Positions 5,644-62,158 of a stretch of 64,000 bases of DNA are shown one piece after another. The notes under the pieces are model-generated. The model was not told the origin of the DNA. It saw only the letters and a program-made list of their open reading frames with translations, and did no database searches. The DNA comes from Octopus sinensis (taxonomy: Eukaryota): NCBI RefSeq assembly GCF_006345805.1, contig NC_043007.1, positions 35,030,001 to 35,094,000 of the forward strand, in the 5' to 3' direction. The translations under genes were made by a program, and so were the position numbers. The stretch's first letter is position 1. Every line of letters begins with the position of its first letter.

Positions 5644-5695
<52 letters not shown>

Positions 5696-6088
5696 CAAGA
5701 CGAATAGACACGTTAAAATGGAAGACGATCGACGAGTCCATATAAAGGAATATGAACGTTCTACAAAGTAGACAATTTTTGCATATAGTCGCCAACGGAA
5801 GAAGAAGCAGCAGTAGAAAAATGTAGAAGAAGGGCGGAGCTAGAAGATTTCATTGGCGGCGCCATGTTTTTTCATTTCTTTCTTTATTTTATTATTTATT
5901 TTGTTTATTGTTTTATTTCTTTTTCTCATTCTTCATATCTCTATGATATGAGAACAAATATACATTAAATATAGAAATATATATATATATATATATATAT
6001 CAGTCGAGCATACACTCGTTATATTATTTCTTATATTGTTAAAAAAGAATTATATTTCGTTTTGTTTTACCTTTCTTATTTATCTTAT

Positions 6089-6125
<37 letters not shown>

Positions 6126-6511
6126 CATATACATACATATCACTGTGCAAGTTATGTATAAGTATGCATGTATATATATATATATATATATATTCACACA
6201 CTCACACGCACACACACGCACGCGCACGCGCACAAATTTCCATAAATAGGCATGGCTGAAGGACAAGAAGTTCACGCAAATCACGTGGTACTAGTTCGAG
6301 ACCTCACTGTGCGTAAGCTCGTCCCATCCATCATCCATTCATCCAACCAACCATATTATATTGATATATATATATATATTGATAAAACGGTAAGATAACA
6401 AAAGAAAGAAAGAGACCTCAATATTATGCAAATATATATATATATATATAATATATATATATTAAAATGTATGTATGGAGGTGTGTGGTGATGGGTGAGT
6501 ATGTATGTATG

Positions 6512-6561
<50 letters not shown>

Positions 6562-6855
6562 ATATATAGACATACATATTTGTGTGTGTGTGTGTCTGCA
6601 CAGACAATGGAGCGAAGATCCAAAGGGAGAAACTCGGAGGAAAGGTTAACGAAGTGTTTAGCTTCCAATAAACATTATTAATAATTCTTTCCCGACGCCC
6701 ATTTGCCTTTTCTGTTTTTTTGGGAACGATAGGGTTCGAAAGAGACGGGAAGTGCTATAGCATATACGTATAGATATATGTTATATGAGTGCGAGATCTG
6801 TGTGTATACATATATGTATAAACTAAAACATACATATGCGTATATATATCTAAAT

Positions 6856-7176
6856 ACTCCGCCGGTTACGACGACGAGGGTCCCAGCTGATACGATCAAC
6901 GGAACAGCTTGCTCGTGAAATTAACGTGCAAATGGCTGAGCATTCCACAGACACGTGTACTCTTAACGTAGTTCTCGGGGATAATCAGCGTGACACAGAG
7001 AGTGACAAGGCTGACCCTTTGAAAATACAAGTACAACTCATTTTTGCCAGCTGAGTGGACTGGAGCAACGTGAAATAAAGTGTCTTGCTCAAGGACACAA
7101 CGCGTCGCCGGGAATCGAACTCACAACCTTACGATCATGAGCCGAATGCCCTAACCACTAAGCCACGCGCCCTCAC
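6856..7176 (-). mobile_element. tRNA-derived SINE, family B head with tail X
   Basis: Minus head GGCGCGTGGCTTAGTGGTTAGGGCATTCGG...GTGAGTTCGATTCCCGG, centre GTCCTTGAGCAAGACAC, 3' tail homologous to 444-620. Confidence 0.85.
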
Positions 7177-7556
7177 CGTATATATATATATACGCATATG
7201 TTTATATGTATGCGTGCTTTTATGTATATGATTATGTAGAATATAGCGGTTCGGCCAAGGCCACCGATGGAAGAAGTACAAGACAAAGAAAAACGGCAAT
7301 GGAATGGATTCATTCGATTAAACCCGCGAGGCGGTGCCACAGCATAGTTGCCATCCAATGACAGAAACAACCAAAAGCTGAAAGAGGAAAAAAAAACTAC
7401 AAAAAAGACATACATACATACATGCATACATATAAGGCATTCGTGTTTCCTCCTTTAATCTTTCACTTGTTTCAGTGATTAGACTGCGGCCATGCTGGGG
7501 CAGAGCCTGTAAGTACTTTAGTCAGACGAATCGGCCCTATATATATATATATATAT

Positions 7557-7679
7557 ATCACCGTGATCACCGTGACCAACCAGGCTATCAGATGTTGCTA
7601 CACATCGCTGGTCACAATGCGCTTCGCATTGATTTAACCTTCAAATGACGCCACCCCGCTGGCTAAGCGAGCAGGCCAA
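7557..7679 (-). mobile_element. 5'-truncated SINE A tail Z
   Basis: Matches 47755-47872 and 36184-36315; ends in a tandem ATCACGGTG repeat. Confidence 0.75.
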
Positions 7680-10242
7680 TATACATACATACATATATAT
7701 ATATATACATATATATATATTATATGTATATATGTATATATATATATAATATATATATATATATATGTATGTATATTACATGTGTCTATATATGAATATA
7801 TGAATATATGAGTATATATATATATATATTATATATATATATATGTGTATGTATATGTATATATGTATGTGTGCATGTATACATATATGTATATATATAT
7901 ATGAAATTTCCCTTTTTGTTTCCAGCATTCCTTGTCATCATCATTTACATCGCTACTCCCTGCCGTACTCCTTCAGTAAACACGTAAACCATCCCCTACC
8001 TATAGACACACATCTACACATGCAATACACTCCCTCTTTTGTTTTCTGTTTTTATCGTGCGTTTATTTTTTTTTTTCCTGCTCTATTTCTGTTTGGCGCT
8101 ATTCTATTACAACTAACAATACTATTTCTATTCTATTTATCTTCTTCCGTTTTATTTTATCTTTTTGTTATATTTTGCCTGTACATCACTATTCCCATAT
8201 TCCCACAACGCAAGTCAACTCCTGTACTCTCCTCTTTGTTGTTGCAATCATTATATATTATTACACAACAGATTTATCCTCCATGTTTTTCTTTTCACTC
8301 GTGTCTCATCTATCTTATTACCCCCCCTTTTTTCTTTCTATTTCTTTCTCTATATGTATGTACACATATGTACGTGTATGAATATATACATACATACAAA
8401 CATACATATATATAAAATTCACATCTCTTTCTCTCTAACTCCTCCTTTCACCCCGTATCCCTTCTCACATACTTTCCCCACTATCTATCTATCTCTCTCT
8501 CTATCTATCTATCGATCTATCTATCAATATATCCATCTATCTATCTACCTATCTACCTATCCGCTTTCACATTTTCTACGTTTCTTACTACCTCTCTTTC
8601 TTATTTCCTCTCTGTCTTTCTCTATTTGTCTCTCCCTCTCTCTCTATATATATATAAATCTCTTTCTCTCTTCTTGTCTACCTGTCTCTCACCCTCTCTC
8701 TTACCTACATGCAGTCTCACTGCCTCTCTCACTCCCCTTTCCTATACTCTCTATCTAACATTATCTTCATCTCTCCATCTCTCTCTCTCCCTTCCCCTCT
8801 CTTTCTTTCTCTCTTCTCATGCGCTATCGTTCTTTTCCCATGTTATCAAATATCGTCTTTGCTGGATATTATTACCAAATATGGCAATGTCTTTTTATCG
8901 CAATTTGTTTGTCTACCCCCTTCCTCTTTCCACTTTCTACTCTATTTGTCTTGCGCTCTCTCTCTCTCTCCCTCTCTCTCTCTCTCACACTCACACACAC
9001 ACACATACTCTCGCTCTCTTCCCACCCTCCCTTGTCTCCCCTCCTCACTCTCTCTTTGTTTCATACTGCCTAATATTTCAATCTGCCACACTCTCTCACC
9101 TATACATCCATTAACACATTTATATACATACATATATATATATATATATACACGTACTTATGCACACACACACATTTATATATATGTTTATATATATATA
9201 TACACACACACACACGCGTATATATGTATATATATATATGTGTGTGTGTGTATGTATGTATATATATACACGCACACATATAAGCATATATACAAGCGTA
9301 CATTATTCTTTATTTCTCTTTTTGTGTTATCTCCACCGCCACATTTCATTTTCTTCCTTGACAAACACCATCCTGTTTCCACTTAGAAAAGGACACGTCA
9401 TTGTCGTCTGCTGCGGAATCTCAGAATTGTGTGTGTCTCATTTTCTGTTGTTTTTTTTCTTTTTTCTTTTTCTCATGACTCATCACCCTCGACATGGCAC
9501 CATCGTAACTCCCTATGATACAGTTCTTACCATTCACCCATTACTACCATCACCACTACCACCACTGTCATTAGAAATTCATCAACATCGTTGTCGTCGT
9601 CGCCTTCGTCATCATGGCGCGCTAATACTTTTTCTTCTCCTAAGGGTGATGAAAAAGATGGATGCACATGATGACTGATAAAGAGAGTTATATGGCAACA
9701 TTCTTCTTGCCAAATCGTTATGTTTCATCGCCATTTCTTGTTTTTATGCCGCAACATTGTTGTGGCTATTATTGCAGTTATCGACGTCAGTATCGGCGTT
9801 CTTGCTTTGTAGGCGTTATCGTTATTTTCGTCTTTGTTCTTAGAATCACATGACTTTGCCAACACTCTGTCACACGTATCATATATCATATATCATACTA
9901 TATCCTGTCCTATTATATCATGTCATACCACATCATATCGTGTGTGTGTATGTGTGTGCGTGTGTGTGTGTATGAAGGAAGCTACCTCAATTGCAATGCG
10001 AAGGTAGCGTTTTAGCGCAGCTGATAATCTGCAGCTTTCGCCAGAGCTACAGCATAAACGTCTCCTCCCAGTTAAATGCTACGCACAATCATGTCGTTTG
10101 GTTTTGCAGGAAGAAAAGTGTCTTTTCAGATCAACCAAAGATCCATTCGACTAAAGTTTCTTCAAGGCGGTACCCCCGACATGGTCACAGTCAAATTAGT
10201 AAAAAAGGCAAAAGCATGTCCCCCCCCCCCAAACATATATAC

Positions 10243-36759: not shown

Positions 36760-36840
<81 letters not shown>

Positions 36841-36843
<3 letters not shown>

Positions 36844-37530
36844 TGAAAAGAAATATTACAAGTAACTGCAGAATATGTGGAGATGGACAAGAAACAATAA
36901 ATCATATTATCTCTAGCTGCCCAGTCCTGGCTAAGAAGGAATATATTCACAGACATGACAGAGTTGGAACCCACATACATTGGAAGCTATGCCAACATTA
37001 TGGAATAACAACAGAAAAAAGATGGTATAGGCACACACCAGAAAATGTCACAGAAAACGAGAAAGCAACCATACTCTGGGATATGCCGATACACGCAGAT
37101 AGAGAAATTAAGGCCAACAGACCAGATATAGTTGTCAGAGATCATGAAGAAAAAAAATGCTTTCTAATTGATGTATCAATACCGGCAGATGACAACGTGT
37201 CTCTAAAAGAAATGGAGAAACTCTCAAAATACAAAGACCTGGAAATAGAGGTAACTAGAATGTGGAACCTGAAAACAGAAACAATTCCTATCATAGTAGG
37301 TGCATTAGGCATGATAAAAAAATATTCAGACAAATACATAACAAAAACACCAGGACTTACAAACACATATAACATACAGAAAATTGCACTACTAGGCACT
37401 GCACACATCCTACGCAGAACACTTTCCATACAATAACCATCAGAGCATCACAACAAATCACAGCACATACCCAAGGCACACAGAGCTGCGCTCGGTAGTG
37501 AAGTGAAAGCACACTATAAAAATAAAACTA

Positions 37531-37533
<3 letters not shown>
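36841..37533 (+). mobile_element. 5'-truncated Dong/R4-like non-LTR retrotransposon (CCHC knuckle, RLE, 3' UTR) in (TAA)n
   Basis: CRICGDGQETINHIISSC, RHDRV, ILWD, RPDIVV, LIDVSIP, EKLSKYKDL, PIIVGALG; (AAT)n on both sides. Confidence 0.9.
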
Positions 37534-37594
<61 letters not shown>

Positions 37595-42046: not shown

Positions 42047-43931
42047 ATATATATATATATATATACATCAGACAAGTTATAGATAATCGTCATTCTATAT
42101 TTTTTCCTTTATCAGAGCAAATTTGGCTTACAGCTGTTTCCAGTTGTCATTATAGGTTCGATACTAATTTGTTTACTCAATCGGTCTATTGATTAGTTGA
42201 GAAAAAAATGAACGACCTTAAAAAATTAACGCTACTTTCGTCTGAATCATTTCAGGTTATAACAAAGCAGAAACTAGACAACAATATTTAAGCCTTATCC
42301 CAGGTTAATAAGATTATGTATGAAGAAAAAGCAGCCAACATTAATATAAGTAATCACCACCAACCATGAATCCACAAATGTTTTACTCTTCTTTTACTGC
42401 TCTTAGTTATTGAACTACGGCCATATTAGGATCCGCATTATGAGAGACGACAATATATGACTGACTGAAAGTTAATTTGGTTGGTGTATATGGGGGGTGC
42501 ATGTGTGTATAACAATATGCAAACATACATGCATGCATACGTACATACATACATATCTACATACATACAGACATACAGACAGATACATACATACATATAT
42601 ACATACATACTACGTAGGAACGTATGTATGGGTTGTTTGTTTCTTCTTGAGCCATGCCTGGCTCATAAAGGCCGGTTTTGCCCTTTACTAGAATGAAGGA
42701 CTACTCAGAATAACAAAACTAAGATATAAAAATCAACAAACAAGCATAACAAATGTGTATTCCCATCATCAGCTGCCAAGCAGGTATCACTATGGTTTCA
42801 GCATCTGGGCAGTGCTACTCAATCCGGCGGTGTTAACAGCGTTTAAAACATAAAGGCTGCTTGGAAATCAATAGTAATCAGCAGAAGCGAAACGTTAGCA
42901 CAATATGTTCGTTAATCCAACACCTGCTTGTTATTACAAGTGACATCAAAGTAAACAGTATTGAATTATAGTTACAAAACAATACCTATGCAACAAAGAA
43001 CTTACTCCGGAAAAGAACGTTGTGATCCTAAAGAACAAAGAAACAAGCGACAAACCTGTTAAACGTGCGATGTTCGATATGATAACATCGACCCCAGCTA
43101 ACAGCTAACCAAGAGTTTAAAACAAATAGATCATAAAACGAACATTAGTCTATGTTTGCTTTTTATCCGTCTGTATCATATCACAAACATGATACTACGC
43201 CATAAAGAAAAGTAATAAAAATTAGTAAAACATTGTACATTGTTTGTCCTTGAACAATATACAAGGAAAAACGACAAGCACAGATCAATACATATAAAAT
43301 ATGTTGAATGTTATAAAATAAAATAACCGCCGAAGAAATTGCAACTAAATGTAAAATAAATGTAAAAAAAAAAAATAATTAAAAAATAAACATAATAAAA
43401 ATAGAATAAATAAAAATGGATTTAGAATTAAATCAAATTGAAAATTGTATATAATAAATTAATATAAAAACAATAAAAACAGGGCAAAAACTATTGAGCT
43501 AGAACAAATAATTAATATGTCCTACCTAGAAAGAGACTAAATAATCTATTATCAATTAAACGGTCAATGTACTCGTTAACTGAGTACAACTCAAACTGCA
43601 TCAAAATTTAGAATAAAGAAATATATCTGGAATTTAAAATCAACACATACACCTAATAACTATAAACATTGAAAACTACTAAAACAAGTACATCCCAACA
43701 AAATTATTTTACATATAACAAAATTCCACGTGCTGCAGAGAAATTAACTGAGACCGTACTCACATCTAAACCCCTTGTTGCCAAAAGACCAAAAGACAGA
43801 TATAGGTCAACTGGAAAAAGTTAATCTCCTCTGCCCACCGGAAGTGACGTTGTCTACTACAGTGAATGACAACTGCCCAGCGGAACTGACATTGTACACA
43901 ACTGTGAATGACCACCAACCCTCAAAGCTTC

Positions 43932-47762: not shown

Positions 47763-48058
47763 ATCACGTGACCGACCAGTCCATCAGATGTAGTTACACA
47801 TCGCTGGTCACAATGCGTCCGCATTGTTTTAGCCTTCGAATGACGCCACCCCGCTGGCTAAGCAAGCAGGCCGACAGAAGAAAGAGTGGGAGAAATAGTG
47901 GTGAAAGAGTACAGCAGGGATCACCACCCCCTGCCGGAGCCTCGTGGAGCTTTTAGATGTTTTCGCTCAATAAACACTCACAACGCCCGGTCTGGGAATC
48001 GAAACCGCGATCCTACGACCGCGAGTCCGCTGCCCTAACCACTGGGCCATTGCGTCTC
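47755..48058 (-). mobile_element. SINE family A head with tail Z
   Basis: Same tRNA head as 444-825 but a different 3' tail ending in ATCACGTG repeats. Confidence 0.88.
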
Positions 48059-48068
48059 CACACACACA

Positions 48069-48720: not shown

Positions 48721-49209
48721 CTGTCGAGCGTCCATTTTATTCTAGTAGCTCTTACGTTTTCAGTGATCTAAGGACCTTGTAACGAGCAAATGCTTACAAA
48801 AAAAGACAGGTAGGTCATAGATACAGCTCCTCTTCCTCCGTTCACACCGACCACGCCACCCGACTCAACCATTACAAAATACCACCGTTTATTCAGTTAT
48901 GTATTCGCTTACGTGTTCCATACATTGGACTGTGGCCATTCTGGTGCATCGCCTTTAAGGGTTTAGTCGTGCAAAGGTCCCCAGTATTATGTTTTTTTCA
49001 CTCTTTGTACGTAATCTATTGGTCTTTTTTGCTAAGCTACAAGGTTATGGGAACATAAACAAACCAACACCGGTTGTCAAGTTGTGAGAGACACACAAGC
49101 ACAAGCATTTATACACATATATGTATAAACAAAATTTAGTGGAGTATTAAAATACCGCTTGTTATAAAGAGAGTTATCGCTCTAAAACCACAAATAACTC
49201 ACTATTAAA

Positions 49210-51646
49210 ATATACTCACTATTAAAATATACTCACTATTAAAATAACTCATATAAAAATATCTTTTCGTTTTCGTTAGTACTCTGTCAGATTCTAAAAC
49301 TTCTAGATACTTATAATTCCCTCCTCCTGTCAATGATTTTAATGTATGGCCATCTGGTAATTGGATATCTTCGTTGTTGACTACCTGTTTCATTCTCATG
49401 GCTAATATTGCACACTGATCTATGTCAAATTTCACGCCTATATCTTTGCTGAAGAGTCTTGCAGTCTGTATTAAGGAATCTATCTCTTTTTCATTCTTCC
49501 TAAAAAGCTTCAGATCATCCATGTAGAGCAAATGGTTGGTTATTTTTTTCCATTACTATTTCTGAACCGAAACCCTGTCTTTGCCTTCCTTAATACTAAA
49601 CTGAAGGGAATCAAACATAAGACAAAATATTGAAGGGGACAACGAGTCCCTCTGGAGAATTCCTCTTTTGGGATTAACTTTCCCTAAGACTGTATCACCC
49701 GAGTAGAGATCTTCGTTTCATTTCTTCATGCTACAGCTAATAAATTCTCTTATATTGACTTCTATACTGAATATATCAATCTCTTGATAAAATATTTTTT
49801 GGTCAGTTCTAAACAATTTGTTTTGTCGGTATTGCTTAATCCGTGGTTCAAACCTAGTTAGCTTTGCATTTTTTTTTTGGCAAGTATGCGCTGCTTCAGT
49901 TCTTCAATTATAACATTCAAGACTTTTGTATCTACACCATAATTCTTGCAAAGTTTTTCGAATTTGCACTCATTCTTAAGTTATCCATTTCTTTTCCTAA
50001 CAGGCATTGACATTACACTGTTTATATCAAGAAATTTATATCTTCTGAAATTCTCTTTTCCACAAAGGTTGTTTATTTCCTCTGCTATCCGTCGCTGTTC
50101 TGCTCTCAGAAGTTCTCAATCCCATCCTTTCTGCCATAATCCTACTAGCAGCTTTGATAAGATTATTTATTTATGTGATGTTCTTTGGTTCAATGTGCCT
50201 CAATACATTATTGACTTTACTCGTCTCTTGATTTAGTATTCATTGGTTAACCTTCTTAAAGTCGCACATAAATTCTGTCCCTTCTGTATTTAATTGATCC
50301 AAAATCCTGTCTCTTATCAATCGGCTTTTATTGTTTAAGCAGTCACTGACCTCAATTCTTTCACAATTCACGATAGTATATTCTTGCGAACAATTGTGTA
50401 TCTCTTCCGCTATACTACTTTCGTTTCTCGTATGCCCAGCATCACCCAATATCCTTCTTTTAATAGCTTCTAGCTCCAGTTCTGTTAATCATCCATTTTT
50501 CCGTATTGCTCTTGCCTGGTCACATATTCTCTGCTTAGTAATTTCAAACAGATCCATTGGCTACCATTTACTGTGCATTCGTTTTATGTACCCTCTGACA
50601 GGCACGCCATTCGCATTCACATGGGTGCTCCAGTAGTAACACTCCATAACCATCATGTTTACTTGTTTATTCCACTTATGCCTTGTAGCATTGCTAGCAG
50701 TGGCTGGATTAACACTGAGCCCACCCTGCTGCACAATGGGACACCTGCCGGGTGCGGCACCTTCACCATTGCTTCCGGTCCCGTTCACACCGTTATCGTT
50801 ATCTATTTTGCTTGGTATTTTCACTCACAAATGAGGTGTGTTTTTAGGTTTTTTTGTTTGTTCCTTCTCGAGCCATGCCTGGCTCATAAGGGCCGGTTTT
50901 CCGGTTTCTTGGCATATAGGTTCCCCACCTGGACGGGACGCCGGTCCATCGCAGGTGAGCTGCAAGATGTAGGAGGAAAGAGTGAGAGAAACTTGTGGCG
51001 AAAGAGTCAGCAGAAGTTTCGCCATTACCTTCTGCCGGAGCCGCGTGGAGCTTAGGTGTTTCGCTCAAAAACAGACACATCGTCCAGTCTGAGATTCGAA
51101 CCCGCGATCCCTCGATCGCGAGTCCGCTACTCTAACCACTAGGCCATGTGCCTCCACGTTTTTAGGTTACTACCAACCGGTATTTTATCACGACTACCCA
51201 TCTGATAAGGGTACACCAGGCACATGCATCACGACCATACGTGCCTGACATGGTAATTTCATATCAACATAAACATCGCATGACCTTGGAGGTGGGGCTC
51301 AGTTACAATTTTCCTCAATTTGAGTAGCTCATCCTGCTCAAAAGGTCCCTGGACAAGGTTCTTTTAAGGATGATGAACGAAACACCCATGTTTCCAGAAG
51401 TTAATTTTCCCACTCCAGATAATCCCTCTTAACAGATGGCTATGATGCTCCCCCACTACTCCTGCTCGTCATCAGAGATGGACATATTGTCAGCAACTAA
51501 GGGACATGATCAACTGATTAAAGTCAAACATCTGACAAGCAATTCTGTGGTATTGAGCAGAATATTTGCTGTAGCCCATTTTTTATGCCCAAACAAAACA
51601 ATGTACATGATAATACTTCCAAACAGTTAAGAACAAAAGCCTGGTA
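49210..51646 (-). mobile_element. Dong/R4-like non-LTR retrotransposon (5' UTR, N-terminus, partial RT), internally deleted
   Basis: N-terminus GRCPIVQQGG...VMECYY...RGYIKRMH...QRICDQARAIRKNG; QYRQNKLF; QGDSLSP; HLLYMDDLKLF...KYL. 5' end abuts an (ATT)n-like tract. Confidence 0.85.
50851..51157 (-). mobile_element. SINE family A head with tail Y, 11-bp TSD
   Basis: TSD GTTTTTAGGTT at 50840-50850 and 51158-51168; a tail Y fragment also at about 42640-42685. Confidence 0.85.
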
Positions 51647-51684
51647 TATTATTGCTATTATTATTATTGTTGTTTTTATTAAAG

Positions 51685-51880
51685 GCAGCGAGCTGGCAAA
51701 ATCGTTTGCGCGCTGGACGAAATGCTTAGCGGTATTTCGCCCGTCGCTACGTTCTGAGTTCAAATTCCGCCGAGGTCGACTTTACCTTTCATCCTTTCGG
51801 GGTCGATAAATTAAGTACCAGTTGCGTACTGGGATCGATCAGATCGACTCACTCTTTTCTGGCCTTATGCCTATAGTAGA
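51685..51880 (+). mobile_element. SINE family D
   Basis: GGCAGCGAGCTGGC head and GTCGACTTTACCTTTCATCCTTTCGGGGTCGATAAA core; more diverged copies at about 52000 and 53290-53485. Confidence 0.8.
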
Positions 51881-51919: not shown

Positions 51920-52080
51920 TACTACTATTACTACTACTTCTACTATTATAATCATTATTATTATTATCGTTGTTGTTGTTCTTATTATTATTAAGACGGT
52001 GAACTGGCGAATTGTTAGTATACCGGACAAAACGCTTAGCGGCATTTCGTCAGTTTTTACGTTCTAGGTTCAAATTCTGC

Positions 52081-52950: not shown

Positions 52951-53570
52951 TTAAAATTTATCTTCGCGCAGTGTATGCATCGCCCCTCTGAAGCCTTTTT
53001 TTTCCTTATTGCAGTTGTTGCTGCTGTTGCTGCTACTACCACTGCTGCTGCTGTCGCTGCGACTGCTGTTGCTGCGACTGCCGCCGCTGCTATTGCCGCC
53101 GCTGCTACTGCTATTAGAGTGATGAATTAGCAGAATCGTTATATTCTGATTCCAAATCCCGACGGCGTCAACCTTGATTTTTGTCATTTTGAAGCTGATA
53201 AAATAAAATACAGCCAAGTACTTAGGTCGATGGTATCAACTAAATACCGCCTCTCCTCAGAAGTATTGGCCTCGTGCCTTTATGAGAAACCAATGACGGA
53301 GTCGAACAAAATGCTTCGTGGCATTTCTTCCCGCTCTTTACATTTCGAATTCAAATCAGGCCGAGATCAATTTTAGCGTTCATCCTTCTGGGGTCGATAA
53401 AATAAAGTACCAGTTAAGTACGGGAGTCAATGCAATCAACTTTTCCCCCTACCCTCAAGATTGCTGGCCTTGTACCAATATTCGAAGCAATCATTAAGGG
53501 AATTAATTATTTATACTTTTAATCCGCACATTCTAATAGCTCCTCTTTAACAATCACTATTATATATATA

Positions 53571-53642
<72 letters not shown>

Positions 53643-54349
53643 CTTCTACAGAAATTATTTAAAACTGATTTTTTACTCATTACAGAAAACTCAGATCATC
53701 CAGTAATTACACTCAATATTATCTTCATATATCTGGGTTTCGCTCATGAATTCTAAATGCAATTATAGTTTCCTTGTGTTTCGTTTTTCATTTGATGTAT
53801 CTTACCAATTTACTTAGCTTCCAACTGAAAATATTATAGATGTAACTTATTTATGGAACAGCTAGTGTATTAATACCTATCGAATTACTGTTTGCATTTA
53901 TCTCAATTTTAAGTATTAATCTATTTCATCTATAATATTCCTGCCTGATATTTTCTGTCTAGCTCATTAATCCTTAAGTATTTCCAAGACTGTGTTTGGT
54001 CTAATTCTCTTATCTCAGTTTCTTTATCTTTCACGGTATTATTGGTTTTATCGATTTTTTTTCTCCCTTGGAATAATCATATTGTGAAACTAATCCGTTT
54101 CATCTTCGCAATGTTCTCTTTTGTTTAGTTCCGTGAAAATTCCTAGCAATTTACTTATAGTATATCTCATGAGTTGGCTTACCAACGGCTAATGCTTCCG
54201 AATGCACAAGTGGAAAATGCTGTCAAAAGCTCTGAGCAATCGATTCATGCCAAACAAAGCTTTATTTTTTTTTATTCCTCTCCTCAGAGAGCCTTTTAGG
54301 TAAGGTGTTGTTAATCAGTAACTGATCTTTAACATCCACATATACCTGT

Positions 54350-54945
54350 GTGAGGTTGCGGAAGAAGCAGCAGCAGCAGCAGCAGAAGAAGAGAAGTAGA
54401 AGAAGAAGAAGAAGGAGGAGGAGAGGAGGCGAGGAGAGGAAGAGAAAGAGAAGGAAGAAGAAGAAAAGAAGACAGAAGAAGAAAAGGAAAGGAGAAGGAG
54501 AAGAAGAAGTAGGAGGAGAAGAAGGAGAGGAGGAGGGAGAAGAGAAAGAAGGAGGAGGAGGAGAAGGGGAGGAGGAGGAGGAGGAGGAGAAGGAGAAGAA
54601 GGAGGAGGAGGAGACGGAGAGGAGGAAGGAGGAGGAGGAGGGAGGAGGAGGAGGGAAGGAATAGAAAGGAGGATGAGGAGAAGAAGAAGAAGAAAAAGGA
54701 GAAGAAGAAGAAGAAGAAGAAGGAAAAGAAGAAGAAGAAGAAGAAGGAGGATAGAAGAAGAAGAAGAAGAAGAAGAAGGAGAAGAAGAAGAAGAAGAAGA
54801 AGAAGAAGAAGAAGAAGAAGAACGACGAACGAGAAGGAGGAGAAAGAGAAAGAGGAGAAAGAGGAAGACGAGTCAAATAAAAACAAGGAGGAGAATGAGG
54901 AAGGAAGGAGACGAAAAAGGAGACGAAAGATGGAGGAGAAAAAGA
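54350..54945. repeat. Polypurine (GAA/GGA)n tract
   Basis: Almost purely purine on the plus strand for about 550 bp. Confidence 0.95.
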
Positions 54946-55283
54946 ACAGGAAGATCTCCGCTCTCATTCCTACCCCCATTTGATTGGGTAGATTTTAGAT
55001 AATCTAGCAAGAAGTCTGGAATTTTTATCATTTCAAGTCATTTACATTCTACCCTTCATGGGTCCTTTTCCAACCCCCACCCACTGTTGCATTTGTTGCT
55101 GCTCGTATCCTTCCGTCCGTATTCATTCTCCGTTCTAAACGTACCAACTTTTCTTTTTTCTCGAGCCTAGATGCAAGCCTGAAGGTGGTCACTCGCATTA
55201 CTATAAGTAGTAGTAGGAGTAGTAGTAGTAGTAGTAGTAGTAGTAGCAGCAGCAGTAGCAGCAGTAGCAGCAGCAGCAGGAGC

Positions 55284-55321
<38 letters not shown>

Positions 55322-55360
55322 AAGTAGTAGTAGTAGTAGTAGTAATGGCAGCAGCAGCAG

Positions 55361-55540
55361 CCGTTCAACAATTTGGACCTGGAGATCTCCATTTCCAGCG
55401 ACTTCGAGGGCCACCTCCCAGTGGTGTCGGGCGTCAACGAAGAGCCCTCGACTACAACAAGACGACCAAAGTTTTTTCCAAGGTCTGGGGTCTCCCGCCC
55501 CTAAGCCCTAGACCATCACCTAATCACCCTTACCCGTCTT
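55361..55540 (+). other. Exon-like GC3-biased island, possibly frameshifted
   Basis: 25/29 codons end in G/C in one register (PFNNLDLEISISSDFEGHLPVVSGVNEEP), then 14/18 in a shifted register; no recognisable family. Confidence 0.3.
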
Positions 55541-55595
55541 GTTGCTTAACAACTACAATATCAGCAGCAACAGCAGCAGCAGTAGCAGTGGCAGT

Positions 55596-55639
<44 letters not shown>

Positions 55640-55913
55640 TTGCTTAGTCTCCCTCAAATCATATCTTAGTTGTTTTAGAAAAGACGACGTACGTTTAGGA
55701 AAATGTACGCCATGTGGTGCTCTGTGTTTGTGTAAACGAATGTGGCAGGAGTCATGGATGGAACGGAACGCTTTTGACAATTGGTCTGCCCCATGAGGGC
55801 AAATGCAGGCCAAAATAACAACGAAAACAGCAAAAGCAGCGACGATAAAAGCCGTAGAACAGTTACAGCATCATCATCATCATCATCATCATCACCATCG
55901 CCATCACCATCAC

Positions 55914-55970
<57 letters not shown>

Positions 55971-56590
55971 CATCATCATCTCATCATCATCAACATCATC
56001 ATCATCATCATCATCATCATCAACAACAACAACAACAACAGAATCAACAATAATAATAATAACATCAACGAAACAAAAATCACAGCAATAACCGCAACAA
56101 CATTGGATTTGTGTTTTATTTGCTGTTTTCATTTAATTCTTTATTATACTTGATATCATTTTTATTTTTGTTTGAAGTCAAAGTCTTTTGATTTCTTCAA
56201 AGAAAAAACATTCCTTTTCATAAAGCCGTATTTGAGATTTAACAAGAATCTCCTCATAACGTTTTCTCTTTCATTCGGCTACATTTTCTGTTTTGTTTCT
56301 TAGTTTTGCACTTCAGCACTTCTTTATTTTCTATTGTTGACATTAGAAAGGTTTACGAAAATGTTTCTTTTTATTTCGTTTCCTTGTGTTTATTTTCTCA
56401 CATTATTTGCTTGCATCTAAATATTTCCTTTGTAGGCGTTTCAACCAGAGTCACTTTCTTTTGTTCCAATTTTTGTGATTTCTACAATGATTTCTTACAT
56501 AATAACAATAATTACTATTGTTGGATAATTATTATTATTATTATTATTATTATTGTTATTATTATCATCATTATTATCATCATTATTATT

Positions 56591-56738
56591 GAGTGAGAGA
56601 GCAGTGCATGCCATCAAAGTGACACTGGGGTAAAAATATACGAAGCCCAGTATACCCATCATGACTACCCGTCTGATAAAGGATACACCAGGCACATGCA
56701 TCACAACCATATGTGCGCGACATGGTGATCTCATATCA

Positions 56739-56803
<65 letters not shown>

Positions 56804-56964
56804 CATCATTATTATTGAGTGAGAGAGCAGTGCATGCCATCAAAGTGACACTGGGGTAAAAATATACGAAGCCCAGTATACCCATCATGACTACACGTCT
56901 GATAAAGGATACACCAGGCACATGCATCACAACCATATGTGCGCGACATGGTGATCTCATATCA

Positions 56965-57026
<62 letters not shown>

Positions 57027-57187
57027 CATCATTATTATTGAGTGAGAGAGCAGTGCATGCCATCAAAGTGACACTGGGGTAAAAATATACGAAGCCCAGT
57101 ATACCCATCATGACTACACGTCTGATAAAGGATACACCAGGCACATGCATCACAACCATATGTGCGCGACATGGTGATCTCATATCA

Positions 57188-57235
<48 letters not shown>

Positions 57236-57406
57236 TATTATTATATCATCATTATTATTGAGTGAGAGAGCAGTGCATGCCATCAAAGTGACACTGGGGT
57301 AAAAATATACGAAGCCCAGTATACCCATCATGACTACCCGTCTGATAAAGGATACACCAGGCACATGCATCACACCATATGTGCGCGACATGGTGATCTC
57401 ATATCA

Positions 57407-57469
<63 letters not shown>

Positions 57470-57616
57470 GAGTGAGGGAGCAGTGCATGCCATCAAAGTG
57501 ACACTGGGGTAAAAATATACGAAGCCCAGTATACCCATCATGACTACCGTCTGATAAAGGATACACCAGGCACATGCATCACAAACATATGTGTGCGACA
57601 TGGTGATCTCATATCA

Positions 57617-57670
<54 letters not shown>

Positions 57671-58005
57671 GAGTGAGGGAGCAGTGCATGCCATCAAAGT
57701 GACACTGGGGTAAAAATATACGAAGCCCAGTATACCCATCATGACTACCCGTCTGATAAGGGTACACCAGGCACATGCATCACAAACATATGTGCGCGAC
57801 ATGGTGATCTTATATCAAGATAAACAGCACATGACCTTGCAGGTAGGGCCTAGTTAGAATTTTCGTCAGCTCGAGTAACCCATCCCGCTCAAAAGGTCCC
57901 TGAATAAGGGTTGTTTAAGGATGTTGAACAAAACACCCATGTTTCCAGAGGCGAATAATTCAAACCCCAAAGAATCCCTCTCAACACATGGCTATGATGC
58001 TCCCC

Positions 58006-58038
<33 letters not shown>

Positions 58039-58391
58039 CATATTATTGAGTGAGAGAGCAGTGCATGCCATCAAAGTGACACTGGGGGGTAAATATATAC
58101 GAAGCCCAGTATACCCATCATGACTACCCGTCTGATAAAGGATACACCGGCGCATGCATCACAAACATATGTGCGCGACATGGTGATCTCATATCAAGAT
58201 AAACAGCACATACATGACCTTGCAGGTGGGGCCTAGTTAGAATTTTCGTCAGCTCGAGTAACCCATCCCGCTCAAAAGGTCCCTGAATAAGGGTTGTTTA
58301 AGGATGTTGACACAAAACACCCATGTTTCCAGAGGCGAATAATTCAAACCCCAAAGAATCCCTCTCAACACATGGCTATGATGCCCCATTA

Positions 58392-58445
<54 letters not shown>

Positions 58446-58991
58446 CATTATTATTGAGTGAGAGAGAGCAGTGCATGCCATCAAAGTGACACTGGGGTAA
58501 AAATATACGAAGCCCAGTATACCCATCATGACTACACGTCAGGCAAGGATACACCAGGCACATGCATCACAAACATATGTGCGCGACATGGTGATCTTAT
58601 ATCAAGATAAACAGCACATGACTTTGCAGGTGGGACCCAGTTAGAATTTTCTTCTGGTCGAGCAATCCATCCCGCTCAAAAGGTCTCTGAATAAGGGTGG
58701 TTAAAGATGTTGACGACGAAACACCCATGTTTCCAGAAGTGAATTATTCAAACCCCAAAGAATCCTCTCGACACATAGCTATGATGCTCCTATGATGCTC
58801 CAGATGTGATCAGAGATGCACATATCGTCAGCCACTAAGGGACATGCTCAATGGTTAAGGTCAAACAACTGACAAGCAAATCTGTGGTATTGAGCAGAAT
58901 ATTGCTGTAGCCATCTTTTATTCCAAGACAAAACAATGTACATGATAACACTTCCAATCAGTTAAGATCAGAAGCCATGAGAGCCACTGCC

Positions 58992-59039
<48 letters not shown>

Positions 59040-59210
59040 GTATCATCATTATTATTGAGTGAGAGAGCAGTGCATGCCATCAAAGTGACACTGGGGTAAA
59101 AATATACGAAGCCCAGTATACCCATCATGACTACCGTCTGATAAAGGATACACCAGGCGCATGCATCACAACCATATGTGCGCGACATGGTGATCTCATA
59201 TCAGTTATTA

Positions 59211-59254
<44 letters not shown>

Positions 59255-59986
59255 TATTATTATCATCATTATTATGAGTGAGAGAGCAGTGCATGCCATC
59301 AAAGTGACACTGGGGTAAAAATATACGAAGCCCAGTATACCCATCATGACTACCCGTCTGATAAAGGATACACCAGGCACATGCATCACAACCATATGTG
59401 CGCGACATGGTGATCTCACATCAGTTATTATTATTATTATTATTATTGAGTGAGAGAGCAGTTCATGCCATCAAAGTGACACTGGGGTAAAATATACGAA
59501 GCCCAATATACCCATCATGACTACCCGTCTGATAAAGGTACACCAGGCACATGCATCACAACCATATGTGCGCGACATGGTGATCTCATATCAAGATAAA
59601 CAGCACATGACCTTGCAGGTGGGGCCCAGTTAGAATTTTCTTCAGGTTGAGTAGCCCATCCTGCTCAAACGGTCCCTGAATAAGGGTTGCTTTAGGATGT
59701 TGAACGAAACACCTATGTTTCCAGAGGTGTGAACCATTCAAACTCCAAAGAATCCCTCTCAACACATGGCCATGATGCTCCCCCACTACTTCTGCTCGTG
59801 ATCAGAGATGCACATATCGTCAGCCACTAAGGGACATGCTCAACTGGTTAAGGTCAAACAACTTACAAGCAAATCTGTGGTATTGAGCAGAATATTTGCT
59901 GTAGCCCATCTTTTATACCAAGACAAAACAATGTACATGATAACACTTCCAATCAGTTAAGATCAGAAGCCATGAGAGCCACTGCC

Positions 59987-60026
<40 letters not shown>

Positions 60027-60391
60027 CATCATTATTATTGAGTGAGAGAGCAGTGCATGCCATCAAAGTGACACTGGGGTAAAAATATACGAAGCCCAGT
60101 ATACCCATCATGACTACCCGTCTGATAAAGGATACACCAGGCACATGCATCACAACCATATGTGCGCGACATGGTGATCTCATATCAGTTATTATTATTA
60201 TTATTATTTTATTATATATTATTATTATTATATCATTATTATTGAGTGAGAGAGCAGTGCATGCCATCAAAGTGACACTGGGGTAAAAATATACGAAGCC
60301 CAGTATACCCATCATGACTACCCGTCTGATAAAGGATACACCAGGCGCATGCATCACAACCATATGTGCGCGACATGGTGATCTCATATCA

Positions 60392-60431
<40 letters not shown>

Positions 60432-61000
60432 TATTATTATTATTATTATTATCATCATTATTATTGAGTGAGAGAGCAGTGCATGCCATCAAAGTGACAC
60501 TGGGGTAAAAATATACGAAGCCCAGTATACCCATCATGACTACCCGTCTGATAAAGGATACACCAGGCACATGCATCACAACCATGTGTGCACGACATGG
60601 TGATCTCATATCAATTATTATTATTTATTATTATATTATTATTATTATTATTTATTATTATTATTGAGTGAGGGAGCAGTGCATGCCATCAAAGTGACAC
60701 TGGGGTAAAAATATACGAAGCCCAGTATACCCATCATGACTACCCGTCTGATAAGGGTACACCAGGCACATGCATCACAAACATATGTGCGCGACATGGT
60801 GATCTTATATCAAGATAAACAGCACATGACCTTGCAGGTGGGGCCTAGTTAGAATTTTCGTCAGCTCGAGTAACCCATTCCGCTCAAAAGGTCCCTGAAT
60901 AAGGGTTGTTTAAGGATGTTGAACAAAACACCCATGTTTCCAGAGGCGAATAATTCAAACCCCAAAGAATCCCTCTCAACACATGGCTATGATGCTCCCC

Positions 61001-61036
<36 letters not shown>

Positions 61037-61386
61037 CATTATTATTGAGTGAGAGAGCAGTGCATGCCATCAAAGTGACACTGGGGTAAAAATATACGAA
61101 GCCCAGTATACCCATCATGACTACCCGTCTGATAAAGGATACACCAGGCGCATGCATCACAAACATATGTGCGCGACATGGTGATCTCATATCAAGATAA
61201 ACAGCACATACATGACCTTGCAGGTGGGGCCTAGTTAGAATTTTCGTCAGCTCGAGTAACCCATCCCGCTCAAAAGGTCCCTGAATAAGGGTTGTTTAAG
61301 GATGTTGAACAAAACACCCATGTTTCCAGAGGCGAATAATTCAAACCCCAAAGAATCCCTCTCAACACATGGCTATGATGCTCCCC

Positions 61387-61452
<66 letters not shown>

Positions 61453-62019
61453 CATTATTATTGAGTGAGAGAGCAGTGCATGCCATCAAAGTGACACTGG
61501 GGTAAAAATATACGAAGCCCAGTATACCCATCATGACTACACGTCAGGCAAGGATACACCAGGCACATGCATCACAAACATATGTGCGCGACATGGTGAT
61601 CTTATATCAAGATAAACAGCACATGACTTTGCAGGTGGGACCCAGTTAGAATTTTCTTCTGGTCGAGCAATCCATCCCGCTCAAAAGGTCTCTGAATAAG
61701 GGTTGTTTAAAGATGTTGAACGAAACACCCATGTTTCCAGAAGTGAATTATTCAAACCCCAAAGAATCCCTCTCGACACATAGCTATGATGCTCCTATGA
61801 TGCTCCAGATGTGATCAGAGATGCACATATCGTCAGCCTCTAAGGGACATGCTCAACTGGTTAAGGTCAAACAACTGACAAGTAAATCTGTGGTATTGAG
61901 CAGAATATTTGCTGTAGCCCATCTTTTATTCCAAGACAAATCAATGTACATGATAACACTTCCAATCAGTTAAGATCAGAAGCCACGAGAGTCACTGTCT
62001 AGTGCTACATCAGGGCATT

Positions 62020-62020
<1 letters not shown>
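56591..62020 (-). mobile_element. Tandem array of 17 copies of a non-autonomous element separated by (TAA)n
   Basis: Every copy shares the 3' end ...GCATGCACTGCTC(T/C)CTCACTC followed by an (AAT)n-type tract; lengths are about 150, 335, 540 and 556 bp; the 5' part is homologous to 51213-51646. Confidence 0.9.
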
Positions 62021-62098
<78 letters not shown>

Positions 62099-62104
62099 GT
62101 AGTA

Positions 62105-62158
<54 letters not shown>

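What the first reader, a model, noticed from the sequence alone, without database searches (positions are those of the whole stretch)
56591..62020. Array of a bipartite non-autonomous (TAA)n-targeting retroposon derived from a Dong/R4 5' UTR
Seen: 17 same-orientation copies, each ending (minus strand) in the same tail of about 75 nt followed by an (AAT)n-type tract, with variable 5' ends (about 150, 335, 540 and a longest 556 bp). About 430 nt of the long copies aligns with 51213-51646, which is the 5' UTR of the RLE retrotransposon at 49210-51646. Established: Dong (R4 clade) elements insert into (TAA)n, and internally deleted non-autonomous derivatives are known for R2 (SIDEs) and some other LINEs. 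Inference: this is a non-coding 5'UTR + 3' tail parasite mobilised by a Dong-like RT/RLE that repeatedly re-targets the TAA spacer, building a retroposon-microsatellite satellite. I do not know of such a Dong derivative being described, but cannot search.
Basis: partly seen in the sequence, partly recalled or inferred. Interest (0 to 1): 0.85.

Follow-up and report, generated by a model that had tools for sequence, protein, structure and literature searches.

The report
Dong-linked non-coding retroposon array in (TAA)n
A 5.6-kb block of 17 head-to-tail copies of a short non-coding retroposon, each ending in a (TAA)n-type microsatellite, is a real mobile-element family also found scattered in octopus genomes; it shares most of its body with the leader of a Dong-like LINE, but this array grew largely by ordinary DNA duplication, so it is a useful though not surprising transposable-element case.

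Summary
Seventeen minus-strand copies lie at 56591-62020. All end in ...CTCTCTCACTC plus (AAT)n. Their lengths are 147-154 (x10), 336-344 (x4), 536, 539 and 558 nt.

Unit positions 37-491 match 51641-51187 at 82%. That stretch is continuous with a decayed Dong-like ORF (N-terminal domain plus RT) once a SINE flanked by an 11-bp target duplication is removed. The last 48-67 nt of the unit has no match in that LINE copy.

New evidence:
- A peptide translated across the body/tail junction finds relatives in Octopus bimaculoides (three UniProt entries).
- Two contigs from other assemblies hold solitary, near-full-length homologues (about 69% identity). One ends in a degenerate (TAA)n, the other in other degenerate triplet repeats.
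- The element is therefore a dispersed, long-lived, non-coding retroposon family, not only a local satellite.

- The array is not 17 independent insertions. A 2.0-kb block of six units plus spacers is duplicated at 96%, and neighbours share irregular spacers.
- The adjacent LINE copy has no RLE domain; only its relatives do.
- No HDV-like ribozyme or pol III head was detected.
- The origin of the tail in the LINE 3' UTR is untested.

Verdict: partly supported; a SIDE-like partner of a Dong-type LINE.

The parts
56528..56590 (-). Left-flank microsatellite, (ATT)n on + which is (AAT)n on -, with ATC interruptions. It lies 3' of copy c01.
56591..56739 (-). c01, 149-nt class
56817..56964 (-). c02, 148-nt class. 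Identical to c03 over the aligned unit.
57040..57187 (-). c03, 148-nt class. First unit of duplicated block A.
57260..57407 (-). c04, 148-nt class. Shares an irregular ATATATAAT spacer with c13.
57470..57616 (-). c05, 147 nt. Chimeric: the tail variant CCCTCACTC and pure spacer of the c06 type, joined to the truncation point of the 148-nt class.
57671..58006 (-). c06, 336-nt class (lineage B). 99.4% identical to c15.
58048..58391 (-). c07, 344 nt (lineage B). Counterpart of c16.
58456..58991 (-). c08, 536 nt (lineage A). 98.3% identical to c17. Its 5' junction is (AAT)nAA|GGCAGTGGCTC.
59057..59210 (-). c09, short class
59276..59424 (-). c10, short class
59448..59986 (-). c11, 539 nt (lineage C). 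About 91% identical to A and 93% to B. Same 5' junction as c08.
60040..60188 (-). c12, short class. Identical to c01. First unit of duplicated block A'.
60244..60392 (-). c13, short class
60466..60613 (-). c14, short class
60666..61001 (-). c15, 336 nt (lineage B)
61047..61387 (-). c16, 341 nt (lineage B)
61463..62020 (-). c17, 558 nt, the longest copy (lineage A). It carries about 21 extra 5' nt that c08 and c11 lack.
56987..58989 (.). Higher-order block A (spacer plus c03-c08). Duplicated as block A'.
   Evidence: 96.2% over 2037 columns
59987..61997 (.). Higher-order block A' (spacer plus c12-c17)
62021..62158 (+). (AAT)n on the + strand, i.e. opposite polarity to all array spacers. It abuts the 5' end of c17. 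Unexplained.
51187..51646 (-). Homologue of the unit body (82%). It forms the 5' leader of the Dong-like LINE copy and is preceded 5' by imperfect (AAT)n at 51647-51690.
50851..51157 (-). 307-bp tRNA-like SINE inserted in the leader, flanked by the 11-bp direct repeat AACCTAAAAAC.
49280..50840 (-). Decayed single-frame ORF of the LINE: N-terminal domain (…RHKWNKQVNMMVMECYY…), an internal deletion, and RT motifs through YMDD. It has many stops, and the 3' end with the RLE domain is missing.
36841..37533 (+). Separate 5'-truncated Dong-like element (CCHC zinc finger plus RLE, own 3' UTR) flanked by (AAT)22 and (AAT)20. Its family has an RT only 32% identical to that of the LINE above.

Best explanation
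The unit is a non-coding, non-autonomous non-LTR retroposon of about 540-560 nt. Its first roughly 490-510 nt are homologous to the 5' leader of a Dong-type (RLE, (TAA)n-inserting) LINE. Its last 48-67 nt are a distinct 3' tail, followed by an (AAT)n tract. In design it is a SIDE-like element (leader plus 3' module, no ORF, no pol III head).

It most likely moves by target-primed reverse transcription using a Dong-like RT/RLE that nicks (TAA)n. The conserved 3' module of about 150 nt (two hairpins) plus the (UAA)n end would serve as the recognition and priming part.

A few copies (about 3-5: a full-length type, a 336-nt type and a 148-nt type) landed one after another in the same microsatellite, each new tail offering a fresh target. 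The locus then grew at the DNA level, by unequal crossing-over between the (ATT)n spacers or the units. That includes one roughly 3-kb-period duplication that copied six units, local unit duplications and at least one chimeric unit.

Shown: the anatomy, the homology, the segmental duplication, dispersal of the family in other assemblies, and the absence of an ORF or pol III head.
Inferred: mobilisation by the Dong-like enzyme, the LINE origin of the tail, and the number and order of founding insertions.
For: - Seventeen 3'-anchored copies with three or four discrete 5' ends, each abutting (AAT)n.
- 82% match of unit 37-491 to the leader of a LINE whose ORF is continuous with it after removing a SINE with an 11-bp TSD.
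- LINE relatives have N-terminal domain, RT, CCHC and RLE in one ORF (P0197, 1129 aa; P0168). One relative (L004, 4666-8409) lies between (AAT)44 and (AAT)7.
- A second Dong-like element in the window is flanked on both sides by (AAT)n.
- No ORF longer than 50 aa in the unit. No tRNA gene in the window and no Rfam family match.
- The family is dispersed. phmmer with the junction peptide gave 8 representatives, three of them from Octopus bimaculoides. L009 holds a solitary full-length homologue ending ...CTCTCTCACTCAC plus degenerate (TAA)n, L006/L007 another, and L008 a short 3' copy.
- The 3' module is the best-conserved part across species and folds into two hairpins (-49.8 kcal/mol, z=-2.35).
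- DNA-level growth: 56987-58989 matches 59987-61997 at 96.2% including spacers; c04 and c13 share an irregular spacer; c01=c12 and c02=c03 are identical; c05 is chimeric.
- The long copies fall into three lineages 91-93% alike. The 336-nt class keeps GTGGGGGAGCATCATAGCC, as c11 and the LINE do, and lacks the c08/c17-specific duplication, so it is not a deletion of its A-type neighbours.
Against: - Only one LINE copy links the leader to the ORF, and it lacks its 3' end, so neither the linkage nor the LINE origin of the tail is replicated.
- The most conserved block of the family straddles the point where homology to the LINE stops. This fits an independent element at least as well as a deletion derivative.
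- In L006 and in two O. bimaculoides entries the tail is followed by other triplet repeats ((GAT)n or degenerate ones), and the 5' flank in L009 is not (TAA)n. Strict (TAA)n targeting is therefore not shown for the family.
- Covariation support for the 3' hairpins is weak: 1 compensatory pair of 45.
- No HDV-like 5' ribozyme was found, although Bombyx Dong has one (PMC3774820).
- Ten copies with one truncation point could be explained entirely by DNA duplication.
Confidence: 0.6

Rival explanations
1. One reading: all 17 units are separate retrotransposition events, each re-targeting the (TAA)n tail of an earlier copy.
For: Every unit is 3'-anchored and followed by (AAT)n, and several 5' lengths exist. 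Dong-type elements pile up in (AAT)n tracts in L004.
Against: A 2.0-kb, six-unit block including spacers is duplicated at 96.2%. Irregular spacer motifs are shared by paired units (c04/c13), and c05 is a chimera of two unit types. Ten units share one truncation point. Units that pair up by position (c06/c15 at 99.4%, c08/c17 at 98.3%) are far closer to each other than the three lineages are (91-93%).
Confidence: 0.05
2. Pure DNA-level satellite. One element inserted once. All shorter units are deletion variants, formed by slippage or recombination between the (AAT)n spacer and AT-rich internal sites and then amplified by unequal crossing-over. No repeated targeting occurred.
For: Higher-order duplication and chimeric units show recombination is active here. 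The truncation sites sit next to AAT-like internal motifs (AGTAGT|GGGGG; TTATC|TTGATAT) that could mediate microhomology deletions. Transposable-element-to-tandem-repeat conversion is well documented (PMC6947457, PMC9659126, PMC11481361).
Against: Three long lineages differ by 7-9%, while the spacers stay almost pure and the block duplication is only 1-4% diverged. The 336-nt class lacks the duplication private to its A-type neighbours. Every deletion would have to end exactly at the microsatellite. The family demonstrably transposes elsewhere.
Confidence: 0.2
3. The roughly 540-nt element is an independent old retroposon, and the LINE copy is the chimera. Either the Dong-like LINE landed in or next to a unit copy with loss of the tail, or its cDNA gained the unit body by template switching. 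In that case 'derived from the Dong 5' UTR' has the direction wrong or is coincidental.
For: Elements that both target (TAA)n are expected to end up adjacent (L004). Only one LINE copy is available. The unit's bipartite form is conserved at about 69% across species, and its most conserved block spans the supposed junction. Only about 50-80 nt separate the homology break from the ORF start.
Against: No remnant of the tail or of (AAT)n lies between the unit-like part and the ORF, so a simple nested insertion is excluded. The leader starts at an (AAT)n-like tract, as a full-length Dong insertion would. A leader of about 490 nt is comparable to the 335-nt leader of the relative in L004.
Confidence: 0.25
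4. Concatemers formed in one or a few TPRT events by RT template jumping from the 5' end of one unit RNA to the 3' (UAA)n end of another. R2-type RTs do this in vitro (from my own knowledge of Eickbush-laboratory work; not checked here).
For: Head-to-tail units are joined only by (AAT)n, and 5' ends are discrete, as expected if a few RNA species served as templates.
Against: It does not explain the 3-kb higher-order duplication with its 1-4% divergence, nor the 7-9% divergence between lineages within one array. Spacers of 41-77 nt are long for jump junctions.
Confidence: 0.07

Closest known systems
SIDEs (short internally deleted elements) of R2 (Eickbush & Eickbush 2012, PMC3414825; summarised in PMC3774820) and of CR1 in Lepidoptera (Wang et al. 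2019, cited in PMC11481361)
   Same: Non-coding. The 5' end is shared with the autonomous LINE and a short 3' module is used for TPRT. It occupies the same target as the LINE. It has no pol III head.
   Different: R2 SIDEs keep a demonstrable HDV-like ribozyme and a 3' end identical to the R2 3' UTR. Here no ribozyme was detected and the tail-to-LINE 3' UTR match is untested. The target is a microsatellite, not 28S rDNA. The family looks long-lived (69% identity across species) rather than a recent deletion.
Dong (Bombyx mori) and Dong-like R4-clade LINEs (DongAg, DongBg), which insert in (TAA)n (PMC3812793, PMC3774820). Dong-R4 LINEs are abundant and recently active in Octopus vulgaris (PMC13282606), and a full-length Dong is reported in O. 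bimaculoides (PMC9115989).
   Same: (TAA)n-flanked insertions. A single ORF with RT followed by CCHC and RLE, seen in relatives and in the window's second element. The unit shares the leader of one such LINE and the (AAT)n tail.
   Different: The unit itself encodes nothing. Clade placement of the window's LINEs against reference Dong/R4 sequences was not done.
RIME/ingi and NARTc/L1Tc of trypanosomes (from my own knowledge)
   Same: The non-autonomous partner consists of the 5' and 3' ends of the autonomous LINE.
   Different: APE-type LINEs, a poly(A) tail and no microsatellite target.
Tandem arrays and satellites derived from transposable elements, for example SINE tandem arrays in bivalves attributed to unequal recombination (PMC11481361) and the reviews PMC6947457 and PMC9659126
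   Same: A dispersed retroposon becomes a local tandem array with higher-order periodicity through unequal crossing-over.
   Different: Here the spacer is the element's own target microsatellite, so seeding by repeated insertion and growth by recombination can both act.

Membership tests
Non-LTR retroposon (TPRT-type insertion) | Copies anchored at a common 3' end with variable 5' truncation and a simple-repeat tail | tested here: met
   All 17 copies end at unit position 558 plus (AAT)n, with 5' ends at about 411, 226, 21 or 1. L008 is a short 3' copy and L009 a full-length copy in other assemblies.
Non-LTR retroposon (TPRT-type insertion) | Dispersed copies at unrelated loci | tested here: met
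   Three O. bimaculoides UniProt entries and Logan contigs L006-L009 with different flanks. Not tested in the source genome itself.
SIDE-like derivative of a LINE | No coding capacity | tested here: met
   The longest ORFs are 43-50 aa and are not conserved as protein.
SIDE-like derivative of a LINE | 5' part homologous to the 5' end of the autonomous element | tested here: inconclusive
   82% over 455 nt to the leader of one decayed LINE copy, contiguous with its ORF after SINE removal. No second LINE copy could be fetched.
SIDE-like derivative of a LINE | 3' part homologous to the 3' UTR of the same autonomous element | not testable with these tools
   The LINE copy is cut at about 49280, before its RLE and 3' UTR. 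The tail has no match elsewhere in the window or in the fetched loci. The other Dong-like 3' UTR (37437-37533) is unrelated.
Dong / R4-clade RLE LINE (for the partner LINE at 49210-51646) | RT followed by a CCHC zinc finger and a restriction-like endonuclease in one ORF | tested here: inconclusive
   This copy has only the N-terminal domain and part of the RT (Pfam RVT_1, 25.6 bits, below the cut-off). Relatives at 32-47% identity (P0168, P0197) have the full architecture.
Dong / R4-clade RLE LINE | Insertion in (TAA)n | tested here: met
   The 5' flank at 51647-51690 is imperfect (AAT)n. The relative in L004 lies between (AAT)44 and (AAT)7. The window's second element at 36841-37533 lies between (AAT)22 and (AAT)20.
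Dong / R4-clade RLE LINE | Phylogenetic placement with Dong/R4/Rex6 reference RTs | not tested
   No reference sequences were available in the tools.
Dong / R4-clade RLE LINE | HDV-like self-cleaving ribozyme at the 5' end (shown for Bombyx Dong and for R4, PMC3774820) | tested here: inconclusive
   Rfam cmscan at E<=10 gave no ribozyme family. An ad hoc double-pseudoknot descriptor gave no candidate shared by c08, c11, c17 and the LINE, and shuffled sequences give about 9 hits. The method is insensitive.
Canonical SINE | 5' head derived from tRNA, 5S, 7SL or snRNA with a pol III promoter | tested here: not met
   ARAGORN found no tRNA genes in the window. Rfam found nothing at gathering or E-value thresholds in the unit.
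Satellite / higher-order tandem repeat | Multi-unit blocks duplicated together with their spacers | tested here: met
   56987-58989 matches 59987-61997, 96.2% over 2037 columns, six units.

The most novel reading that the evidence does not exclude
A long-lived octopod retroposon lineage that parasitises Dong-type RLE LINEs without any pol III head. It would keep the LINE leader and a conserved 150-nt 3' module. Because its tail is also its target, it would seed arrays of retroposon plus microsatellite that recombination then inflates. This would be a general route by which (TAA)n-targeting elements create both microsatellite growth and new satellites, and it could account for part of the large 'unclassified SINE' fraction reported for octopus genomes.
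Probability: 0.3. Interest if true: 0.55.

Novelty: new member of a known kind. Interest (0 to 1): 0.35.

Why it matters
If confirmed genome-wide, this gives the Dong/R4 group a documented non-autonomous partner of the SIDE type. It also provides a clean example of how a target-specific retroposon and its target microsatellite together nucleate a tandem array, which then expands by unequal crossing-over.

This is practically relevant for annotating octopus genomes. Dong-R4 LINEs are among the most recently active families there, and most 'SINE' families remain unclassified (PMC13282606). Three O. bimaculoides UniProt 'proteins' appear to be translations of this element.

It does not reveal a new mechanism. 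Each ingredient is already known: (TAA)n targeting, internally deleted LINE derivatives, and transposable-element-derived arrays.

Tried and rejected
- Exact-pattern scans of metagenome contigs and genome contigs, with a 23-mer of the tail and a 30-mer of the most conserved leader block, found nothing. These collections do not hold the host genome.
- Exact look-ups of the antisense 50-aa ORFs of c11 and c17, and of P0210 and P0211, found no contigs.
- Searching papers for four 20-mers of the tail gave no hit. The supplement of the O. vulgaris repeat paper holds no library.
- Rfam at gathering and at E<=10 gave only low-complexity noise such as CrcZ and miRNA models.
- A home-made HDV-like descriptor was too permissive (about 9 hits per shuffle) and gave nothing conserved.
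- I tested whether the tail is a diverged continuation of the LINE leader, or a remnant of tail plus (AAT)n ahead of the ORF. It is not significant.
- I considered that the window's other Dong-like element (36841-37533) is the partner. This was rejected as the same family: its RT (via P0195, whose contig L005 is 99.3% identical in DNA) is only 32% identical to the RT at 49.3-49.7 kb, and its 3' UTR does not resemble the tail.
- I considered that c08 is a c11/c17 recombinant. This was rejected: the six differences are private to c17, because the LINE copy agrees with c08 and c11.
- I considered that the nearby 186-bp SINE-like repeat is a general (TAA)n-tailed family. This was rejected: only 2 of 9 copies end in TAA repeats.
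- RNAalifold on 8 sequences keeps the two hairpins but shows only one compensatory pair, so there is no claim of proven structure.

Full report
**1. What is there**

The region 56528-62158 is a compact array. The motif GAGTGAG[AG]GAG occurs 17 times on the + strand, each time just after an (ATT)n run. Read on the minus strand, each unit ends ...GCACTGCTCTCTCACTC and is followed by (AAT)n.

I delimited each unit by the next microsatellite. This gives ten units of 147-154 nt, four of 336-344 nt, and three of 536, 539 and 558 nt, with spacers of 23-77 nt. BLAST of the longest unit (c17) against the window shows every copy ending at unit position 558 and starting at about 411, 226, 21 or 1. TRF describes the same thing as periods of about 201-223, 386-411 and 3.

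**2. The match to 51.2-51.6 kb and what that sequence is**

Unit positions 37-491 align to 51641-51187 at 82%. A gapped local alignment carries weak similarity to about position 510 and then stops.

Downstream on the minus strand lies a 307-bp tRNA-like SINE (50851-51157), flanked by the 11-bp direct repeat AACCTAAAAAC. With the SINE and one repeat copy removed, the leader runs directly into a single reading frame (50840 to 49280). That frame encodes:
- a characteristic N-terminal domain (…RHKWNKQVNMMVMECYYW…GYIKRMHSKW…TKQRICDQARAIRKNG…);
- then, after an internal deletion, RT motifs up to NHLLYMDDLKLF and about 60 aa beyond.

Pfam gives only a sub-threshold RVT_1 hit. The frame has many stops and the element ends at about 49280, next to a 17-bp tandem repeat. 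This copy therefore has neither an RLE domain nor a 3' UTR.

Homologues at 32-47% identity include complete ORFs. One example is P0197 (1129 aa), with the same N-terminal domain, RT, a CCHC finger (CRMCG…H…C) and a restriction-like endonuclease region. One relative fetched with flanks (L004, element at about 4666-8409) lies between (AAT)44 and (AAT)7, with further copies in the same locus separated by (AAT)n.

The 5' flank of the window's LINE is also an imperfect (AAT)n. Calling it Dong-like is therefore reasonable on architecture (seen in relatives) and on target. A phylogeny against reference Dong/R4 sequences was not possible.

**3. A second Dong-like element**

At 36841-37533 (+) there is an intact ORF tail with the CCHC and RLE region and its own 3' UTR (…AAAACTACTG), flanked by (AAT)22 and (AAT)20. 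It has hundreds of homologues in marine invertebrates. It is 99.3% identical to a Logan contig (L005) that encodes 684 aa of RT, CCHC and RLE.

That RT is only 32% identical to the RT at 49.3-49.7 kb. The window therefore holds two different Dong-like families. The 3' UTR of this second family does not resemble the array tail.

**4. The unit is a genuine, dispersed retroposon family**

The host genome could not be searched as DNA. Instead I translated a unit across the body/tail junction (MRSPCRAHMVVMHVPGVSFIRRVVMM|GILGFVYFYPSVTLMACTALSLNNN) and ran it against 1.84 billion representative proteins.

Eight representatives came back at 52-78% identity. Most cover the junction and tail, followed by a run of N ((AAT)n) or D ((GAT)n), or in one case an H/Q-rich stretch. 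Three are UniProt 'uncharacterized proteins' of Octopus bimaculoides: A0A0L8HA28, A0A0L8IHR3 and A0A0L8IEC1. The window is therefore very probably octopod, and the element is scattered over several gene models in that genus.

DNA for three hits:
- L009 (3.4 kb) carries one solitary homologue, 69% identical to c11 positions 15-539. It ends …GATGCTCTCTCACTCAC followed by a degenerate (TAA)n, and a 90-nt 5' fragment lies just upstream.
- L006/L007 carry another near-full-length homologue (68%), whose tail runs into degenerate triplet repeats.
- L008 carries a short 3' copy (80% over 122 nt) with a short AAT-like tail.

So the arrangement of leader-like body plus tail is not a recent local accident. 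It is conserved across species as one element.

The 3' 150 nt is the best-conserved part, and its most conserved block (GTAGTCATGATGG.TATACTGGGCTTCGTATATTT) spans the point where similarity to the LINE leader stops. The 148-nt unit folds into two hairpins (-49.8 kcal/mol, z=-2.35). The alignment keeps them but offers only one compensatory change in 45 pairs. The structure is therefore plausible, not proven.

**5. How the array was built**

A self-comparison shows that 56987-58989 and 59987-61997 are 96.2% identical over 2037 columns. This covers six consecutive units (c03-c08 and c12-c17) with their spacers.

Other DNA-level signatures:
- c04 and c13 share an irregular spacer (…GATATAATAATAATATATAAT…).
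- c01=c12 and c02=c03 are identical.
- c05 combines the tail variant and pure spacer of its 336-nt neighbour c06 with the truncation point of the short class.
- The ten short units share a single truncation point, with two junction variants (AAC|TGATATG and AAT|TGATATG).

These features show that much of the copy number comes from unequal crossing-over, not from new insertions.

On the other hand, the long copies form three lineages that are only 91-93% alike: A (c08/c17), B (c06/c07/c15/c16) and C (c11). Pairs made by the block duplication are 98-99% alike. The 336-nt class retains GTGGGGGAGCATCATAGCC, like c11 and the LINE, and lacks a duplication private to lineage A. It is therefore not a deletion of its neighbours. 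Each length class abuts the microsatellite exactly.

The most economical account is a handful of TPRT insertions into one growing (TAA)n tract, followed by recombinational amplification. I cannot exclude that lineages A and C are an old in-situ duplication, because c08 and c11 share the same 5' junction. I also cannot exclude that the short class is a short master element.

**6. Other tests**

- No tRNA gene was found in the window.
- No Rfam family matched at gathering threshold, and nothing credible at E<=10.
- A hand-written HDV-like descriptor gave no candidate shared by the homologous 5' ends, and about nine hits per shuffled sequence. Bombyx Dong does have such a ribozyme (PMC3774820), so this remains open.
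- The unit has no ORF above 50 aa. An antisense 50-64-aa ORF is open in three of four homologues but diverges as expected for neutral sequence.
- The tail shows no significant similarity to the sequence between the leader and the ORF.

**7. Comparison with what is known**

Dong-type elements insert in (TAA)n in moth, mosquito and snail (PMC3812793). Dong-R4 LINEs are abundant and recently active in Octopus vulgaris (PMC13282606), and a full-length Dong is reported for O. bimaculoides (PMC9115989).

Non-coding derivatives that keep the 5' end and a 3' module of their LINE are known as SIDEs, for R2 (PMC3414825, PMC3774820) and for CR1 (cited in PMC11481361). RIME/ingi is a further analogue (my own knowledge). 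Conversion of dispersed elements into tandem arrays by unequal recombination is also well documented (PMC11481361, PMC6947457, PMC9659126).

The present element works like a SIDE of a Dong-type LINE. Membership in that class is incomplete, because the tail-to-LINE 3' UTR identity and the replication of the leader linkage could not be tested. I found no description of such a Dong partner in the papers searched, but Repbase and Dfam could not be consulted.

**8. Verdict**

The element is a real non-autonomous, (TAA)n-tailed retroposon related to a Dong-like leader. The array is mainly a recombinationally amplified cluster seeded by a few insertions. RLE, ribozyme and tail origin are not demonstrated for the adjacent LINE copy.

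I rate it a new member of a known kind, of moderate interest (0.35). One feature remains unexplained: the opposite-polarity (AAT)n tract and the 21 extra nucleotides at the 5' edge of the last copy (62000-62158).

Noticed in passing
window 36774-37593: 5'-truncated Dong-like LINE 3' end (CCHC finger plus RLE ORF, own 3' UTR) sitting between (AAT)22 and (AAT)20. It is 99.3% identical to a Logan contig (L005) encoding 684 aa of RT and RLE, so the family is young.
   Followed up: yes
window 50851-51157 (also 637-825, 47877-48061, 42633-42679): tRNA-like SINE of 307 bp inserted in the LINE leader with an 11-bp TSD (AACCTAAAAAC). Partial relatives occur elsewhere in the window. ARAGORN does not call it a tRNA.
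   Followed up: partly
window 62000-62158: The microsatellite abutting the 5' end of the last copy is (AAT)n on the + strand, opposite in polarity to all array spacers. The last copy also has about 21 extra 5' nt, and six private substitutions in its first 190 nt. This may be a rearrangement breakpoint.
   Followed up: partly
window 51436-51630 (+) and the homologous parts of c11 and c17: An antisense ORF of 50-64 aa is open in three of four homologues of the leader. Amino-acid divergence (about 28%) matches neutral expectation, so it is probably not a gene.
   Followed up: partly
window 51695-51880, 52025-52080 and seven other sites: A 186-bp SINE-like repeat has nine copies in the window. 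Only the two next to the LINE end in TAA-type repeats. The LINE's 5' flank is the tail of one of them.
   Followed up: partly
window 49192-49262: A 17-bp tandem repeat (4.4 copies) sits exactly where the LINE ORF breaks off. The LINE is 3'-truncated, which is unusual for a non-LTR element and points to a later deletion or rearrangement.
   Followed up: no
window 53000-56100: A dense run of different triplet microsatellites ((TGC)n, (GAA)155, (AGT)46, (CAG)21, (CAT)52) lies just upstream of the array.
   Followed up: no
L004 1-12562 (ENA ERZ25067548): In a distant relative's genome, at least four Dong-like copies in both orientations are packed together, separated by (AAT)n tracts of up to 44 units. 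This shows that pile-ups in (TAA)n are typical for this LINE group.
   Followed up: partly
L009 1065-1154: A 90-nt fragment of the element's 5' end lies 35 nt upstream of the full-length homologue, giving a partial head-to-head-less tandem in another species.
   Followed up: no
UniProt A0A0L8HA28, A0A0L8IHR3, A0A0L8IEC1 (P0210, P0211, P0214): Three Octopus bimaculoides 'uncharacterized proteins' of 49-103 aa look like translations of this retroposon's 3' module running into (AAT)n or (GAT)n. They are probably annotation artefacts.
   Followed up: partly
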